From positions 464,958 through 528,957 of IMG/VR virus record IMGVR_UViG_3300035182_002586: a stretch of 64,000 nucleotides of DNA. One strand, 5' to 3'. Position 1 is the stretch's first letter; each line of letters begins with the position of its first letter. Shown piece by piece: positions 12,174 through 51,000 of this stretch. Below the pieces are notes generated by a model. That model made no database searches, was not told the DNA's origin, and was given only the letters and a program-made list of their open reading frames with translations. The position numbers and the translations under genes were made by a program.

Positions 12174-12860
12174 ATGGACCCGCGAGACATCCGAGCCTGG
12201 CTCCGAGACCCCGAGACCAACGGGGGCGACCTCTGGCTCAAAGCCAACGGAGAGGAAGCGATCCGTCTCCTGCTTGGGCGTCTCGACGCCTTCGAGGATC
12301 GAGACGAGACGATCGCGCGCGACTCGGCGGAGCGGAGGGCACGCATGGACGCCTTCATCGCGAAGCTCGAAGAGAACGCGCCGCCCCCTCCGACCCCGGA
12401 GGAGATGGAGAAGACTGCGGAGAGCTTCGCCGAAATGTTCAAGCCGTGCGAGCACTGCGGCAAGTCCGGCATGTCCTGCATCGAGGACGAAAGCTGCCAC
12501 TGCTGCTACGGCTGCATCCGCCTGCGGGACATCCTGCACGCCGTCCTGACCAACCCGAAGAGCGAGACCCTCGCGGCTGCGCGGGCAGCCTACGAGGAGA
12601 GTGACCCCCGCCAGTGGATCGGGTCCGAGATCGCCTACCGGCTCAAGGACCTTGGCGTGGAGGTGGTCCGGAGCCCGTTCCCCGACTTCATCCAGGGCAG
12701 CAAGGGGGACAAGACCTTCGCGGCGCGAGCGGACGGGATCAAGGTCTTCTACTGGATCAACCACGGGGAGGAGAAGCAGGCGGAGTACCTGGTCGACCTG
12801 ATCGACACTCTCGTGGCCGAATTCCAAACCCCTCTGGATGGATCGGCCCCGCCCCCCTGA
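12174..12860 (+). CDS. Hypothetical protein with central Cys cluster
   Basis: ATG 10 nt after GGTGTA (12158); CEHC...CxxxxxCxCCxxC. Confidence 0.6.
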   Translation: MDPRDIRAWLRDPETNGGDLWLKANGEEAIRLLLGRLDAFEDRDETIARDSAERRARMDAFIAKLEENAPPPPTPEEMEKTAESFAEMFKPCEHCGKSGMSCIEDESCHCCYGCIRLRDILHAVLTNPKSETLAAARAAYEESDPRQWIGSEIAYRLKDLGVEVVRSPFPDFIQGSKGDKTFAARADGIKVFYWINHGEEKQAEYLVDLIDTLVAEFQTPLDGSAPPP

Positions 12861-13656
12861 GGTAGTAGGGGCATGAGCAGCACGCCCCTCCCCGAAGTCG
12901 GCCAGAAGATCGCCTACTGCATCGGCAGCGATCGCTACGCGGTCACGATCAAGGACGTTCAGCGCGGGGGCCAGACGGTCATCGTCGAGCTGCGTCAGGG
13001 CCGCAACGTCCACGAGTACGAGTGCACCAAGGGCCGCGACGGCGTGTACCGGGAGAAGGGTCACCGTATCGGGATGCTCGACTTCACGCGCAGCGACGGC
13101 CACCTGTCGCGGGAGTTCTGAGATGGGGGCCAAGCGCGAGAAGCTGAAAGAAGACCTGCGGGAGGCCATCCGCCTCATCCGCATGTTCGTCGACGGGGAG
13201 TACTGCACCTTCCACTACGACCGCAAGGACGGCGAGACGTGCAAGGAAGCACAGTCGCGTAAGCAGGGTGTCCCCATGCCCGGGTGCGACCAATGCCAGG
13301 CCCGCGACTTCCTCAAGAAAATGAAGGACTTCCGATGAAGACGACGATCACCGAGTGGTACGCGCGGGGTGGTGGCATCGCGAAGTCTGGCCCCCACGCG
13401 TCGCAGGCGATGGCTGCGGCCGCGATCATGGGCGTCAACGGCTTCCCCGTGGAAGACGCCTTCATCTGGCCCGTCGAGGTCGAGCGCGAGGTGCTGAGCA
13501 CCTCCGACGAGTACGTCGTGTGGGCCGCCCTCTCCGCCATGGTCGACGACGTGCACTGCGCGCAGGACCAGCTCACCGAAGAGCAGTGGGCGCACGCCAG
13601 CAACCTCTTCCAGCGCCTCACCAAGAAGCTGAACGCCAAGTCGGAGTCGAAGTAGC

Positions 13657-14478
13657 ATGTTCCACACCCTCGCCGCCCACGACGACCTCGAAGCGAAGCG
13701 CGAAGCCCTCGCGGCGAAGCTGCTGCGTCCGGTCTACATCGTCAGCGCGACCTGCAAGAGCAACGGGACGCACTTCAAGCGCCCGCGCAGCATGAAGTAC
13801 GCTCCGATGGGCGCCCTGGAGCTATACCTCTCGACGCTCACCGACGACAACCGCTGCGTCAAGCGCGTGAAGGTCAACGACGACTCGGCCAACGACCACT
13901 ACTACTTTGACCTCCGCGAAGCGGACTTCCTCCACGTCGTCTACCCGATGACGGACCAAGAGAGCACGCTGCCGGGGATTCGCGACGCGTTCAAGTCCGT
14001 GGACCTGACGAGTGGCCTCAGCCCGTGCGAGAACGTCTACCCCTCGTCGGGCGAGCCGATCCCGCCGGAGCTGGAGAAGTATCTCCGCTCGAAGAAGGTC
14101 CGCAGCGGGGTGACGCGCATGGGAATTCTCTTCGCGCGCAGCGAGGCGATCGCCACCCCGAACAAGCTCCACGAGCGCTGGCACCGGGGTCTGAGGGTCG
14201 AGGGGAAGTACGCCCCGCCGTTCGTGACCCTCCAGGCGCCGGGCTGGTACCACGGCAAGCCGATCACCACGGTCGAGAACATCAACCGCTTCGGCCTCCT
14301 CGACACCGACCCGGGCCCCTGCACCGTCTGCCACGGAAAGAGCGGAGATCGCCGTCACATCGCCCCGGTGCAGTCGGCGGGCCCGGACGCCTACCTCGCG
14401 GGTCACCTGTGTCGCACCTGCGCGAAGGACGCCTTCGCGCAGTGGGCCAACCTACTCGACGACGCTACGCCGATCTAG
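13657..14478 (+). CDS. Hypothetical protein
   Basis: 273-aa ORF tightly packed after the upstream stop; C-terminal CxxC...CxxC. Confidence 0.65.
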   Translation: MFHTLAAHDDLEAKREALAAKLLRPVYIVSATCKSNGTHFKRPRSMKYAPMGALELYLSTLTDDNRCVKRVKVNDDSANDHYYFDLREADFLHVVYPMTDQESTLPGIRDAFKSVDLTSGLSPCENVYPSSGEPIPPELEKYLRSKKVRSGVTRMGILFARSEAIATPNKLHERWHRGLRVEGKYAPPFVTLQAPGWYHGKPITTVENINRFGLLDTDPGPCTVCHGKSGDRRHIAPVQSAGPDAYLAGHLCRTCAKDAFAQWANLLDDATPI

Positions 14479-14479
14479 G

Positions 14480-14833
14480 GTGTCGTTCGAGGATACCCTC
14501 ACGGACGACAACCCACTGGCCGACGAGACCATCAGCGAGGGTGAGCTGGAGGTCTACCTGTCCGTGTTCCTCGGCGATCTGTTGACCAAGCTGGACCCCC
14601 GCGAGCGAAACGTCGTCGACCGTAGGTTCACGGACAACCCCGAAACACTCGAAGAGATCGCCAACAGCTTCGGCCTGTCGCGGGAGCGCGTCCGTCAGAT
14701 CGAGGAGCGCTGCCTGAACAAGATCAGGGACGCCATGGCGAAAGGCGGCCACTTGGGCGTCCCGGGGACCTGGCGCATCGGCCTCGACGACTGGCCCGTG
14801 GTCATGGACAAGATGACACTGGTGGGGGAGTGA
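14480..14833 (+). CDS. Stand-alone sigma70 region 3.2/4 HTH protein
   Basis: LTKLDPRERNVVDRRF...TLEEIANSFGLSRERVRQIEERCLNKIR is a canonical sigma70 r4; regions 1-3 are absent. Confidence 0.85.
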   Translation: MSFEDTLTDDNPLADETISEGELEVYLSVFLGDLLTKLDPRERNVVDRRFTDNPETLEEIANSFGLSRERVRQIEERCLNKIRDAMAKGGHLGVPGTWRIGLDDWPVVMDKMTLVGE

Positions 14834-14866
14834 TGGATCGAGCCATCACCGCCTTGTAGTAGACTC

Positions 14867-15166
14867 ATGACGAAGAAATACGTTGGATACTTCGCGCACC
14901 TCTCCGACCTGCCGGTCAAGCGCGGTCAGACGGTGACGATCCCCAAGGGGACTGTGATCCACACGACCGGACCCACGAAGAAGCGGATCGCGAAGCGCAC
15001 CTACAAGATCAAGGTGCACAGCGTCGGCTGTGGCCAGAACCACCCCGAAGGTCACCCCGACCACATCGGTGGCTACTCCGTGCGCAACCCCGACGTCACG
15101 TGGGTCGGCGAGGGCGGCTACTGGTTCTCGGTGGACATCAACGACGTCCCCGAGGCGAACGCCTGA
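14867..15166 (+). CDS. Conserved-looking phage hypothetical protein (VTIPKGT...WVGEGGYW)
   Basis: Follows the class I motif at 14832. Confidence 0.7.
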   Translation: MTKKYVGYFAHLSDLPVKRGQTVTIPKGTVIHTTGPTKKRIAKRTYKIKVHSVGCGQNHPEGHPDHIGGYSVRNPDVTWVGEGGYWFSVDINDVPEANA

Positions 15167-47234: not shown

Positions 47235-47729
47235 GAGAGCGTCCTACACCATCTTGTCGGCAGGCGGGCCGGATGTGACAGGGGCCGAGACAAAAAGCAG
47301 ACAGCCCGTGTCCCGACCAAGGGGCACAGGCCAAGGGGCACAGGCTGTCTGCCGCGCTTTGGAGGGCTACAGGAGCGGACCGTAGAGGACGTCACGCCGC
47401 ACGTCCGAGATGGTGCGGCAGGGGGCGCTCGTGTGGAAGTACGGGTTGCCGTCCACCCACGGGTTCTCGGGGACGACGACGGGGCTGACCTCGTAGCCCT
47501 TCTCCAAGAGGGCGGCAGCCATCTTGCGGAGCGTCTCGACGTCGGGGCTTCGGTACGTGGTCATGGGGGGCACTACAACGGGAGGGGCGGGCCGATCCAT
47601 CCGAAGATTGTGGGCTGAGGACTGGACTCTCGGGGACAGTTAGCCCACCGTTTCCCGTTTCAGGGCTGCCGTTGTAGGGAATCACGTGCTTCCGCTACGG
47701 AAGGTCCTGCCAGTCGGGTCGTATCGTGG

Positions 47730-48062
47730 TCAGTCGTTGTTGTGCGGGTCGGGGATGCAGCCGAGGTTCTGGAAGTTGTCGGCGAAGAACTGCTCGACCG
47801 CGCTGAGATTCGTCGTCGGGGCCACGTCCAGCTCGACCCGGAAGCGGGTCTCGCGCGGGGCCGAGATACTCCCCTCGGTGAGGTAGAACGTCGTGCTGGC
47901 GAACGTGCGGTCGGTGGACGGGAGAAGCAGCTCGAACTCCAGGAAGTAGAGCTTCTCGCCCTTCGCGTTCTTGAAGGTCTTCTGCCAGACCTCGCGGCCG
48001 CCGGCCGGATACGTCCTGTATCCGGCCTCGGTGAGGCTCTCTCGGGTGACGGTCTTGTTCAT
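47730..48062 (-). CDS. Phage hypothetical protein
   Basis: MNKTVTRESLTEAGY...NLGCIPDPHNND; ATG at 48062. Confidence 0.6.
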   Translation of the reverse strand: MNKTVTRESLTEAGYRTYPAGGREVWQKTFKNAKGEKLYFLEFELLLPSTDRTFASTTFYLTEGSISAPRETRFRVELDVAPTTNLSAVEQFFADNFQNLGCIPDPHNND

Positions 48063-51000
48063 GGGGTTCAACCCTGCTTGCCGAACGAGTGCGCGACCTC
48101 GTGGTAGTGGGCCGCGCTCATGAGGTGGTACATGATGGCCGAGACGCGGCGCTCGACCGGGAACTGGTCGCGGCCCTGCTCGCCGCTCAGCCAGCGACGC
48201 GCGCACTTGAGGCACGAGCGGGTCAGCTTGAGCGCGTGGGCGCGGGTCATCTCGATGGTGGTCTCGGTCTCGATGGCGGGGTGCAGGCTGTCCATGTCCC
48301 CACTACAGCGGGAGGGGCGGGACGATCCATCCAGAAAAGGTGACGCCGCTAGAGGAGAACCGTCATCCCTGCGAGGAACTGAAGACGTTCCTCCCGGGTG
48401 CGGAACCGGTACATGCCCCCACGGAACGAGAGGCTCAGGTCCTCTGGGAGCGCCTTGTCTTCGTCGTAGAGCCAGTCGAGCAGCTTGTTGAGGGCGCTGG
48501 GAGTGAACCCCTCAGCCTCGTAGACCGGGTGCGGCTCCTGCTGCACGAGGTTGATGTTCATGGTCAGCCTCCGAACTCCTTGATAACGAACTCCGTCTCC
48601 TCGACGAGCCCCATGAGGTTGCGGGCCCGAGCCTGCTCGCAGCGCGTCCGGAGCATCGGCAAGTCGGCGGGGCCGAGCGGGCGAAGAACCTCGCTGAGCG
48701 AGGCCGAGTAGCCCACGGCGGGCTCCTGCACGCCGTCGGAGGGCGCACGGAAGGCGAGGCCCGGACCGGGAGCCTTCCCGGGAGGCGGGGTGTACGGCCC
48801 CTGGTAGCGCAGGATTTTCCCACCCACGAGCATGTAGATCGTGCCGACGGTCAGCGGGCTGTCCATTGCTTCTCCTACACCGCCACCGGGCGGGGAATAC
48901 CAGCGCCAATCACGTAGTAGAGGACCCGCGCGCCAGCGACATCCCTCCAGTAGTATCGGCAAAGCCCTTGCCTGCCAAGGAAGCGGAGTCGCATCACTTG
49001 GGGGTTCTTGGTCATGGGGATCAGAGGGCGAAGAGCGTTTTCTCGACGGCGGTGGCGTTGCGCACGGCGAACCGGATCTCGTAGCCGTCCGTGCGGGCGT
49101 CGCAGTCGAAGTACAACTTCCAGGTCGCCTTGAGCGGGCGGACGAACGCGTCGGCCGGGATGGCGTCGAGGATCGCCTTGACCTTCTTCTCCAGGCGGCC
49201 ACCGGCGACCGAACCGGTCACGCGCAGCTCGCAGGAACCCGTGAGACTGTTGACGAAGAAGCGGCGGGGCTTGGGGGTCTTCGAGGTGGCCATGACTCCA
49301 CTACCTCGCGTGGGGCGATCCATCCGGCCTCGGACGAATTCCTCAGACCTCGATCACGACTTCCTTGTAGGGCTTGCCCACGCCAGGGACGACGAAGATG
49401 TCGACACGGCGCGCCGCCCCGTCCTCGTGAAGGTCCTCCTCCAGCTCGTCCTCGGCCGCGATGAGGACGTAGCCGCCCGTCGCCGCGTAGGAGATCGCCG
49501 GGTCTCGGAACGCCTTGAGGCTCTCCCAAATGCTGGCCGCCACCCTGTCGGGGTCGCCGCCGTAGGTGGGGTTGTTCTTCGCCAGGAAGGTGCACGCACC
49601 GTCGAAGTCCGACTGGCTGAACAGGATCTTCATGAGGTTCTCTCGTACACCGCGGGGGTCGGGGTGGTCACAGGTCGTCCTTCCGGGCGATGAACTCGCG
49701 GTTGTCGGGGTCTTGGTTCGCCCAAGCGACGCCCCAAGCGATGGCCTGGTCGCGCCCTTCACGCGTCTCCGTCACGAAGAGGACCTGGTGGGCATCGAGG
49801 CCCGAACTCGCCCGGACGGACCAACCCTTGAAGGTCTTCGTGAGGATGGCGCCGCGTCGGCCGCGTCGGTGCTGGTCAACCTGCACCTTGATCAGACCGG
49901 GAGAGTCGTACGTGTCGGCATAGCGCCCGGGGGTACAGAGACGACGCGTCTCCTCGTCCCACTTCGAGGGGTTGCCGGCGAGGAGCGTGAAGTGCGCGGT
50001 GTTGACCATGACCCTACTACAGCGGGACCCCCAAGGGGATCCATCCGCGAACTCTTCTACCTGAGCGTGACAATACACATACCTCCTGTAGGGCTGAGGG
50101 TTGACGGAGAGAGGGTCACACGAGGCCGAAGTTCGCCAGCACGCACTCCTGCTCGACGATCGCCTTGAGCAGGCCGTCCTTCTTCGCAGCGAGGAGCTTG
50201 TACCCCTGCGAGCCGACCGGGAAGTTCGAGTAGATCGGGTCGGCGTCGAGGTCACGGAGCTGCATGACGAGCGCGGTGCGCTCCTCGATGGCCGTGAAGA
50301 CCTTGCCGGCCTCTTCGCTGTCCAGCTCGATGAAGCGGGCTTCCAGCTCGGCTTCGACGAAGTTGTAGAGCGCGGGGTTCGAGGACTTGAGGGCGGCGGC
50401 CTTGGACATGCGCGTGGGTGGGGACGATCCATCCGGAATCGTCACCCGGTGATCCGGCTGAAGTCGAGCTTGTCGTGCGGATCCATCAGCCGACCGACCG
50501 TAGCGGGACGACCTCGGGCTTGGGGAGCATGACGGTATCACCCAAGGCGAGAACAGCATCCTCCCAAGGACCGCGCTTGAACGCCACGATGTTCGGGGGG
50601 AACTTGGCGCTTCCCCCGGCAACGGCGTTGAACCACCGCAGGCCGAAGACCTTGAGGCCGTTCTCCCCCCACAGGTCGATAAGGTACCAGTAAGGGGTGT
50701 GCGAACGGAGAATCATCTTCCCGCTGGAGTCGACGAAGCCGTCGCACGGCTTCTGCTTCGGCGCCACCGTGAACGGCGTCTCCAAGGACACGTGGAAAGG
50801 GCCGACATCGAACGTCCGGCGAGACGGGGCCGTTTCGTTCACGTGCCATGCGGCGGTGTCGGGGTGGTTGGCGAGGAGACGCAGCAGAGCGTCCCGAAGG
50901 GCCAGGGCGCGTTCGAGACGGGTCGGCTTCTTCATACCCACCACTACCGCGGAAGGGTCACCTCGATCCATCACCGAGGGGCCGACCGCGAAGGACCGAG

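What the first reader, a model, noticed from the sequence alone, without database searches (positions are those of the whole stretch)
14480..14840. Stand-alone sigma70 region-4 protein next to a class I motif
Seen: a 117-aa ORF with only the region 3.2-like linker and the complete r4 HTH (TLEEIANSFGLSRERVRQIE). The upstream ORF is unrelated and in another frame. Established: r4 binds the -35 element and the RNAP beta flap, and phages remodel this interface (T4 AsiA/MotA). Inference: it could redirect RNAP to, or repress, the non-canonical GATGGATC box, or act as a flap-binding decoy that shuts off host sigma.
Basis: partly seen in the sequence, partly recalled or inferred. Interest (0 to 1): 0.6.

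Follow-up and report, generated by a model that had tools for sequence, protein, structure and literature searches.

The report
Stand-alone sigma region-4 protein, huge phage
A roughly 0.5-Mb phage that has no RNA polymerase of its own carries an intact 117-aa gene that is only the tail end (region 3.2 linker plus region 4) of a bacterial sigma factor; it probably interferes with the host polymerase's -35/flap interface, and it is unlikely to read the phage's own GATGGATC promoter box.

Summary
Window 14480-14833 (+) encodes a 117-aa protein with a complete Sigma70_r4 domain (Pfam E=5.6e-18), preceded by the C-terminal part of region 3.2. It is closest to RpoH/RpoS-type sigmas.

It is truly stand-alone:
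- The 529-kb record has no region 2 or 3 in any frame.
- The upstream 273-aa gene is an unrelated family that occurs without r4 in other phages.
- An exhaustive search of 1.8 billion proteins found no ortholog.
- Every short "r4-only" hit I inspected was a frameshifted or truncated full-length sigma.

The adjacent GATGGATC is the -35-positioned box of a phage promoter class: 69 sites, then 16-17 nt, then (T)GTAGWRGG, then a leaderless ATG. It drives the next gene, and another copy drives the operon that contains the r4 gene.

The recognition helix (SRERVRQIE) is the canonical TTGACA-reading type, so reading GATGGATC is not supported. The phage has no recognisable RNAP.

Best guess (about 0.35): an accessory early-region sigma-4 mimic that competes at the host beta-flap/-35 interface. 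Rivals are half of a split or minimal sigma, a plain HTH regulator, and a remnant. Minimal single-HTH sigmas in RNAP-less jumbo phages are already described, so I class it as a new member of a known kind.

The parts
14480..14833 (+). Gene for the 117-aa stand-alone sigma region 3.2(C-terminal part)+region 4 protein (stop TGA 14831-14833)
   Evidence: ORF; Pfam Sigma70_r4 E=5.6e-18; NCBIfam RpoH E=1.3e-16; AF2 model pLDDT 78.5; PDB fold matches to sigma32/sigmaA
14480..14569 (+). Residues 1-30: region 3.2-like linker; keeps family-typical D5, L7, D9, P12, E16; low-confidence/flexible in the model up to about residue 19
14570..14629 (+). Residues 31-50: region 4.1 helix (LDPRERNVVDRRF); the following 4.1-4.2 loop is 3 residues shorter than in RpoS/SigA
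14645..14734 (+). Residues 56-85: region 4.2 helix-turn-helix with recognition helix SRERVRQIE (pLDDT 94-98)
14735..14830 (+). Residues 86-117: C-terminal tail with a low-confidence helix at 102-112; 'LDDWPV..TL' resembles the tail of an RpoH-like full-length cellular sigma (P0025/P0079 cluster)
13657..14478 (+). Upstream 273-aa gene, abutting the r4 gene (TAG-G-GTG), unrelated to sigma; conserved C-terminal CxxC...CxxC; homologs in two other phage contigs lack a following r4 gene
12837..12875 (+). Class-I promoter (box 12837-12844, GTAG 12862-12865, leaderless ATG 12873) that heads the five-gene operon ending with the r4 gene
   Evidence: no sigma70-type promoter or terminator on this strand between 12000 and 16000
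14832..14869 (+). Class-I promoter next to the r4 gene (box 14832-14839, 16-nt spacer, GTAGTAG 14856-14862, leaderless ATG 14867); it serves the downstream 99-aa gene
14867..15166 (+). Downstream 99-aa gene of unknown function, first gene of the next transcription unit
14830..14849 (+). Inverted repeat GTGATGG-ATCGAG-CCATCAC spanning the r4 stop codon and the GATGGATC box; not seen at other copies of the box
   Evidence: direct reading

Best explanation
Shown: this is an intact, stand-alone protein made of the C-terminal part of sigma region 3.2 plus a complete region 4. It descends from a cellular group-1/2/3 sigma (RpoH/RpoS-like). It is the last gene of a five-gene operon in the small-gene, promoter-dense end of a ~0.53-0.62-Mb phage, and that phage has no recognisable RNA polymerase and no region 2/3 sigma. 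Inferred: it acts as a sigma-4 mimic. Its 4.1/4.2 surface, and the retained linker that in a real sigma lies in the RNA-exit channel, would dock on the host RNAP beta-flap, and/or its unchanged recognition helix would occupy TTGACA-type -35 elements. Either way it competes with region 4 of the host's own sigma and lowers -35-dependent host transcription. The phage's own promoters would be spared: they have a TGTA(G) core, either with no -35 element (class II) or with a GATGGATC box that is read by something else (class I). It is an accessory takeover gene, not a core one.
For: Identity: Pfam r4 E=5.6e-18; NCBIfam RpoH/RpoS models align to residues 5-88; PDB sequence matches RpoS, RpoH and SigA from region 3.2 to 4.2; AF2 pLDDT is 81-98 over residues 20-90; fold matches are sigma32 in holoenzyme and isolated sigma-4 domains at 1.8-2.4 A, including sigma-4 on -35 DNA. 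Stand-alone: no Sigma70_r2 or r3 anywhere in six frames; the upstream gene is a separate family. Real gene: GC3 0.89; the start abuts the preceding stop; a groundwater variant carries 2 synonymous changes plus D52N in a loop. The 3.2 linker is not decayed relative to the HTH: identity to real sigmas is 0.25 against 0.52, compared with 0.20 against 0.47 among the sigmas themselves. This argues for a function still tied to RNAP. DNA-reading residues R68, E69, R70, R72, Q73 are invariant or nearly invariant with cellular sigmas. Host-RNAP dependence: no beta/beta' Pfam hit, no D[FYW]DGD motif in any frame, no T7-type RNAP. Phage promoters lack TTGACA-type -35 elements: TTGACA is in 2 of 397 upstream regions and full sigma70-type pairs number 8 against 8.5 expected. 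Accessory status: r4 is absent after the 273-aa gene in L029, L030 and two X4 contigs. Precedent for phage remodelling of the sigma-4/flap interface: P23-45 gp39 (PMC3950348), T4 AsiA and gp33 (PMC7824862, PMC7948647).
Against: There is no direct evidence of binding to RNAP or DNA. The only complex prediction gave no verdict, so it counts neither way. By established biochemistry, a free sigma-4 lacks the main core-binding determinant (sigma-2 with the beta' coiled-coil) and would compete poorly with a tethered region 4 unless it is abundant. The host is unknown. No expression data exist: no RNA run holds the locus. About 90 kb of the parent contig, trimmed off by IMG/VR, was not examined and could hold an RNAP or sigma gene. 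Conservation of the 3.2 segment could reflect recent capture from an unsampled donor instead of selection. The comparison set was chosen by similarity to the query, which inflates the query's identities.
Confidence: 0.35

Rival explanations
1. It is the sigma-4 half of a split or 'minimal' sigma factor. Docked on the beta-flap, it recruits host RNAP to phage promoters, possibly the class-I promoters with the box at the -35 position. It would work together with an unrecognised sigma-2-like phage partner or with the host sigma's regions 2-3.
For: The phage lacks its own RNAP and any region-2 sigma, yet it has two promoter classes with non-host motifs and two r4-only proteins of 117 and 215 aa. 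The class-I box sits at a fixed 16-17 nt from the -10-like box, a sigma-like geometry. Split sigmas with an r4-only subunit are established (SigO-RsoA, Tn916 Sig7-8; bioRxiv 10.64898/2026.10.01.756105), and minimal single-HTH sigmas are described in RNAP-less jumbo phages (PMC7824862). Small sigma-2-like partners such as RsoA or Sig8 escape Pfam.
Against: The recognition helix is unchanged from TTGACA-reading sigmas, while phage promoters carry GATGGATC or no -35 element. No neighbour matches any sigma or RsoA-like family. The abutting 273-aa gene occurs without r4 in relatives. The gene is dispensable in some relatives. It is itself expressed from a class-I promoter. The ECF-like 215-aa protein is at least as good a candidate reader of a GGATC-type box; this last point rests on my own knowledge of ECF -35 motifs and was not tested.
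Confidence: 0.25
2. It is an ordinary free-standing helix-turn-helix DNA-binding regulator (repressor or activator) that happens to derive from sigma region 4 and no longer contacts RNAP.
For: Sigma-4 is a compact HTH that can bind DNA on its own (1ku7 among the fold matches). Short Sigma70_r4-only proteins are annotated in many uncultured phages. All DNA-contact residues are kept.
Against: The 3.2 linker and the 4.1 helix have no DNA-binding role, yet they keep the family-typical residues. No enriched TTGAC-type site exists in the phage's upstream regions, so there is no obvious phage operator. A monomeric sigma-4 binds DNA weakly (established knowledge).
Confidence: 0.2
3. It is a functionless remnant of a captured or decayed sigma gene.
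For: No ortholog exists anywhere. It is present or absent among close relatives. Every other short r4-only hit I inspected was a fragment.
Against: The frame is open with all invariant sigma-4 residues. Codon composition matches the phage. There is no upstream debris of regions 1.2-3.1 in any frame. It is packed tightly between a stop codon and a promoter. It is identical in two microbial-mat runs, and a groundwater variant shows 2 synonymous and 1 conservative change.
Confidence: 0.1

Closest known systems
Region 3.2-4.2 of cellular group 1-3 sigma factors (RpoH/sigma32, RpoS, RpoD/SigA)
   Same: Homologous over residues 4-90. Same 4.1 helix, same HTH, same recognition-helix residues, same fold.
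   Different: Lacks regions 1.2-3.1 entirely, so it has no sigma-2 and cannot melt the -10 element or hold core RNAP the usual way. The 4.1-4.2 loop is 3 residues shorter. It has a 32-residue tail seen only in one RpoH-like cellular cluster.
'Minimal' single-HTH sigma factors of RNAP-less jumbo phages (Iyer, Aravind et al. 2021, PMC7824862)
   Same: A jumbo phage without its own RNAP encodes a protein that is only the flap- and promoter-binding HTH of sigma.
   Different: Those were described for T4-like 'group 2' jumbo phages with family B polymerase and were interpreted as ancient. This phage has a family A polymerase, and its protein is plainly a secondary derivative of an RpoH/RpoS-like cellular sigma with the 3.2 linker attached. 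I did not compare sequences with those proteins.
Split (two-subunit) sigma factors: B. subtilis SigO-RsoA and Tn916 Sig7-Sig8
   Same: One subunit is essentially sigma region 4, encoded on a mobile element in the case of Tn916 (bioRxiv 10.64898/2026.10.01.756105).
   Different: Those have an adjacent, co-required small region-2-like partner and a cognate autoregulated promoter. No such partner or matching -35 element was found here.
T4 gp33 (with gp55)
   Same: A small phage protein that takes the place of sigma-4 on the beta-flap in a phage that uses host RNAP (PMC7824862).
   Different: gp33 does not bind DNA and is not recognisably homologous to sigma-4 by sequence. This protein keeps every -35-contacting residue.
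Phage factors that remodel the sigma-4/flap interface: T4 AsiA and Thermus phage P23-45 gp39
   Same: Same proposed target interface and outcome: -35-dependent promoters are shut off and -35-independent phage promoters are spared (PMC3950348, PMC7948647).
   Different: Those folds are unrelated and bind sigma-4 or the flap as foreign ligands. Here the proposed inhibitor would be a copy of sigma-4 itself (mimicry), which has not been demonstrated for any phage to my knowledge.

Membership tests
Pfam Sigma70_r4 (PF04545) domain | Match above the gathering score over the whole domain | tested here: met
   64.6 bits against 24.1, profile positions 2-49 of 50
Functional sigma-70-family sigma factor | Region 2 (core binding through the beta' coiled-coil, -10 recognition and melting) | tested here: not met
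   No r2 in the ORF or upstream gene, and none in six frames of the 529-kb record
Functional sigma-70-family sigma factor | Region 4 with -35-contacting recognition helix | tested here: met
   R68, E69, R70, R72, Q73 invariant or nearly invariant with cellular sigmas
Split sigma (SigO-RsoA / Sig7-Sig8 type) | Adjacent co-transcribed small region-2-like partner | tested here: inconclusive
   No family match for any of the eight neighbouring gene products. The 273-aa neighbour occurs without r4 elsewhere. Such partners can escape profile searches.
Split sigma (SigO-RsoA / Sig7-Sig8 type) | Cognate promoter whose -35 element fits the region-4 subunit | tested here: not met
   Phage promoters carry GATGGATC or no -35 element; TTGACA is in 2 of 397 upstream regions
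Minimal single-HTH sigma of RNAP-less jumbo phages (PMC7824862) | Jumbo phage lacking its own RNAP | tested here: met
   No beta/beta' or T7 RNAP Pfam hit and no D[FYW]DGD motif. Caveat: 90 kb of the parent contig was not seen.
Minimal single-HTH sigma of RNAP-less jumbo phages (PMC7824862) | Sequence relationship to the described group-2 minimal sigmas | not tested
The phage has a family A, not family B, DNA polymerase.
T4 gp33-like flap-binding co-activator | Binding to the beta-flap tip | tested here: inconclusive
   The complex prediction with E. coli beta 825-945 returned no verdict
Pseudogene / recent truncation of a full sigma gene | Remnants of regions 1.2-3.1 upstream, or full-length orthologs at the same locus in relatives | tested here: not met
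   No remnants. Relatives have either the same short gene or none.

The most novel reading that the evidence does not exclude
Domain replacement in trans. The phage sigma-4 module displaces region 4 of the host's own sigma from the beta-flap. The result is a hybrid holoenzyme (host sigma regions 2-3 plus phage sigma-4 with its unique tail) whose upstream promoter contact, or whose contacts with activators and anti-sigma factors, are now set by the phage. This would be sigma appropriation by molecular mimicry, without an AsiA-like remodeller.
Probability: 0.1. Interest if true: 0.75.

Novelty: new member of a known kind. Interest (0 to 1): 0.4.

Why it matters
Huge phages without their own RNA polymerase must reprogramme the host enzyme, and how they do so is mostly unknown outside T4-like phages. 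Here the pieces are unusually clear and testable: a sigma-4-only protein with fully canonical DNA- and RNAP-facing residues, two sharply defined non-canonical promoter classes giving leaderless mRNAs, and no region-2 sigma. If the protein proves to be a sigma-4 mimic that blocks the flap/-35 interface, it would add mimicry to the known ways phages disable host promoters. If it proves to be a promoter-recruiting minimal sigma, it would support the idea that a single HTH can serve as a sigma. On present evidence it is an orphan accessory gene in an uncultured phage with an unknown host, and it belongs to an already-described category.

Tried and rejected
1. Complex prediction of the 117-aa protein with E. 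coli beta residues 825-945 (flap): no verdict, score 0.04. It is not evidence either way.
2. AF2 of the 273-aa neighbour on a 3-sequence alignment: pLDDT 44. Too poor for a fold search; the beta-rich secondary structure is only a weak hint against a sigma-2-like fold.
3. Same-length homologs. The word search and the exhaustive search gave many 80-150-aa r4-only hits. Every one inspected was a contig-edge or frameshift fragment of a full-length sigma (P0025/P0081; P0217, P0185, P0147; LR756511.1 124-aa ORF).
4. L003 looked like an independent 620-kb relative but is the parent contig of the window itself, 100% identical.
5. IMG/VR scans with the 117-aa and 273-aa proteins found no relatives. Megablast against phages found none.
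6. LR745208.1 (485 kb) was tried as a natural test of 'promoter without the r4 gene'. It shares the 215-aa protein, but its GATGGATC copies lack the GTAG box (2 of 20) and its GC is 54%, so it is not informative.
7. Fusion of the 273-aa and r4 ORFs by +1 frameshifting: rejected, because homologs of the 273-aa protein end at the same '...LLDD..PI' without any r4.
8. A sigma32-type DnaK-decoy idea: dropped. Only region 4 aligns to E. coli RpoH, and the N-terminus is acidic, not hydrophobic.
9. Genome-wide TTGACA depletion (43 against 148): not used as evidence, because codon bias at about 85-90% GC3 probably explains it.
10. Expression: no RNA run holds the locus, so transcript starts could not be checked.
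11. Reading the ~90 kb that IMG/VR trimmed from the parent contig: no handle was offered, so the host remains unidentified.

Full report
**1. What is there**

- Window 14480-14833 (+) is an open frame of 117 codons starting with GTG. It begins one base after the TAG stop of the preceding gene, 13657-14478.
- Pfam finds a complete Sigma70_r4 domain at residues 35-83 (E=5.6e-18, 64.6 bits against a cut-off of 24.1). PHROGs places it in a sigma-factor family.
- Against solved structures the best sequence matches are RpoS, RpoH and SigA. The RpoS alignment runs from residue 4 to residue 90, from the C-terminal part of region 3.2 ('EDTLTDDNP' against 'LDTLTDDRP') through 4.1 and 4.2.
- NCBIfam ranks RpoH models first (E=1.3e-16, residues 5-88 on model positions 195-279 of 289), then RpoS, then RpoD.
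- An AlphaFold2 model built on 31 aligned sequences is confident over residues 20-90 (pLDDT 81-98). It has a flexible N-terminus and a low-confidence helix in the tail.
- The model's best PDB matches are sigma32 and sigmaA in holoenzymes. Isolated sigma-4 domains superpose at 1.8-2.4 A, including sigma-4 bound to -35 DNA.

**2. Is it really stand-alone?**

- The window is the last 64 kb of a 528,957-bp IMG/VR virus record, cut from a 620-kb metagenome contig.
- The record encodes Baseplate_J, tail proteins, a family A DNA polymerase and an intein-containing ribonucleotide reductase. It is a very divergent huge phage of 65% GC.
- Six-frame searches find no Sigma70_r2 above noise and no Sigma70_r3 anywhere.
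- The upstream 273-aa protein has no match in Pfam, PHROGs, NCBIfam or PDB and no similarity to the N-terminal part of a related full-length sigma.
- That protein has its own homologs (58% and 38% identity) on two other phage-like contigs. They end at the same C-terminus and are followed by unrelated genes, with no r4-like sequence by tblastn.
- So the r4 ORF is not the 3' end of a frameshifted sigma gene. This matters because every other short r4-only hit I examined was exactly that, or a contig-edge fragment.
- An exhaustive HMMER search of 1.84 billion representatives found 9,194 sigma-type hits but no ortholog. After the protein itself (255 bits), the best hit scores 72 bits and is the C-terminal third of a 280-aa r2+r4 sigma.

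**3. Is it a live gene?**

- Its base composition by codon position (GC3 0.89, GC2 0.38) matches its neighbours.
- All invariant sigma-4 residues are present.
- Contigs from two microbial-mat runs are identical to the window where they overlap it.
- A groundwater variant carries three listed changes in the gene: two synonymous, and D52N in the variable 4.1-4.2 loop.
- The 3.2 linker has not decayed relative to the HTH. The query's identity to 85 full-length sigmas is 0.25 in region 3.2 and 0.52 in region 4.2. Among those sigmas themselves the figures are 0.20 and 0.47. The set was selected by similarity to the query, which biases the comparison.
- The gene is accessory. Two groundwater contigs follow the 273-aa gene up to its last codon and then continue with different sequence, like L029 and L030.

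**4. The 'class I motif'**

- GATGGATC occurs 26 times in the window against 2.5 expected, always in the orientation of the genes. It occurs 78 times in the genome, concentrated at 420-529 kb.
- In 69 of the 78 copies it is followed, 16-17 nt later, by (T)GTAG(T/A)(G/A)GG. In 45 of those 69 an ATG starts exactly 11 nt after the G of GTAG.
- This is a two-box promoter with sigma-like spacing that yields leaderless mRNAs.
- The copy at 14832-14839 overlaps the r4 stop codon and serves the next gene (ATG 14867).
- The copy at 12837 heads the five-gene operon (12873-14833) whose last gene is the r4 gene. No sigma70-type promoter or terminator intervenes on that strand.
- A second class has no conserved -35 region: (C)GGTGTA(G/C), then 9-12 nt, then ATG. 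It occurs about 120 times across the genome.
- TTGACA-type -35 elements are not used. TTGACA is in 2 of 397 upstream regions, and full sigma70-type pairs number 8 against 8.5 expected.

**5. What reads these promoters, and what does the r4 protein do?**

- The record has no multisubunit RNAP (no Pfam hit and no D[FYW]DGD motif in any frame) and no T7-type RNAP. Within the DNA available, the phage depends on the host core enzyme.
- Its only sigma-related genes are the 117-aa protein and a 215-aa protein with two ECF-like r4/HTH modules. The 215-aa protein has a 40%-identical homolog in a 485-kb uncultured phage.
- The recognition helix of the 117-aa protein (S-R-E-R-V-R-Q-I-E) carries the residues that are invariant in group 1-3 sigmas. 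By established structural work on sigma-4/-35 complexes, these read TTGACA-like elements. This point is my own knowledge; the complex 1ku7 is among the fold matches.
- Nothing suggests re-specification towards GATGGATC. The gene is also itself a product of a class-I promoter, and it is dispensable in relatives.
- I favour, at modest confidence, a sigma-4 mimic that competes with the host sigma's region 4 at the beta-flap/RNA-exit channel and/or at host -35 elements. This would spare the phage's TGTA(G)-core promoters. It parallels what P23-45 gp39 and T4 AsiA achieve with unrelated folds (PMC3950348, PMC7948647).
- The retained 3.2 linker and 4.1 helix are useful only on RNAP, which is the main argument for this over a plain HTH regulator.
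- The main rival is a split or minimal sigma subunit (bioRxiv 10.64898/2026.10.01.756105; PMC7824862). No partner was found among the neighbouring gene products, but such partners are hard to detect.

**6. Comparison and novelty**

- Iyer et al. [quoted passage not shown] They also describe gp33 as a flap-binding HTH.
- The viral structure library lists several 82-142-aa 'Sigma70_r4 domain containing' proteins from uncultured phages among the best matches. I could not check whether those are complete genes.
- This case is distinctive in three ways: it is a clear secondary derivative of an RpoH/RpoS-like cellular sigma with the 3.2 linker attached, it has no ortholog, and it sits in a phage whose promoters do not match its predicted specificity.
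- It still falls within a described category, and its function is not demonstrated. I class it as a new member of a known kind, of moderate interest.

**7. Limits**

- The host is unknown and no RNA data exist.
- About 90 kb of the parent contig was not examined.
- The binding prediction returned no verdict.
- The population-variation evidence rests on a few short contigs.

Noticed in passing
genome-wide; in the window e.g. 12837, 14832, 15175, 17416, 18669, 21014 (+) and 47594-50972 (-): Class-I promoter: GATGGATC, 16-17 nt, (T)GTAGWRGG, then ATG 11 nt after the G of GTAG. There are 69 full sites, concentrated at 420-529 kb of the record, implying many leaderless mRNAs. The factor that reads the box is unknown. 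The box resembles an ECF-type GGAAC -35 element more than TTGACA; that comparison is from my own recollection and was not tested.
   Followed up: partly
genome-wide (G000:C1), about 122 sites on both strands, sparse at 220-280 kb: A second promoter-like class: (C)GGTGTA(G/C), 9-12 nt, ATG, with no conserved -35 region. GGTGTAG occurs 127 times against 34 expected.
   Followed up: partly
G000:C1:71524-72171 (-), = L002 1171-1818 (-): A second r4-only protein of 215 aa: acidic N-terminus, an ECF-like r4 at about residues 55-110, and a second HTH at about 112-180. It lies next to a 419-aa gene. It has a 40%-identical homolog in the 485-kb uncultured phage LR745208.1.
   Followed up: partly
window 13657-14478: An orphan 273-aa protein family (three members at 38-58% identity) with invariant C222, C225, C252, C255 forming a probable C-terminal zinc ribbon. 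No family or structure match; the AF2 model is poor.
   Followed up: partly
window 14476/14477 boundary, in run X4: Two groundwater contigs match up to the stop of the 273-aa gene and then continue 'GAGGGAAAAACACATGCAG...', meaning a different gene occupies the r4 position. This is cassette-like replacement exactly at the gene boundary.
   Followed up: no
window 14830-14849: A 7-bp inverted repeat with a 6-nt loop (GTGATGG-ATCGAG-CCATCAC) spans the r4 stop codon and the promoter box. Other copies of the box lack it. It may mark the 3' end of the operon transcript, or it may be chance.
   Followed up: no
whole record G000 and parent contig Ga0373636_0000001: IMG/VR labels the 529-kb record a 'provirus', but the parent contig is 620 kb. 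About 90 kb at one end and about 450 bp at the other were trimmed. The trimmed part may be phage rather than host; I did not examine it.
   Followed up: no
L030 2260-3276: In a 52%-GC relative contig, the gene after the 273-aa homolog encodes a DnaJ-domain/protein-kinase fusion of 338 aa.
   Followed up: no
G000:C1:397565-400792 (L018): A 1,076-aa protein with an ATP-cone and an intein splicing domain, probably a ribonucleotide reductase interrupted by an intein.
   Followed up: no
window 14549-14566: GGAGG lies 11 nt upstream of an in-frame GTG (codon 29). An internal start would give an 89-aa protein that is r4 only, without the 3.2 segment. The 14480 start is favoured by the conserved 3.2 residues and by the JGI gene call.
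   Followed up: no
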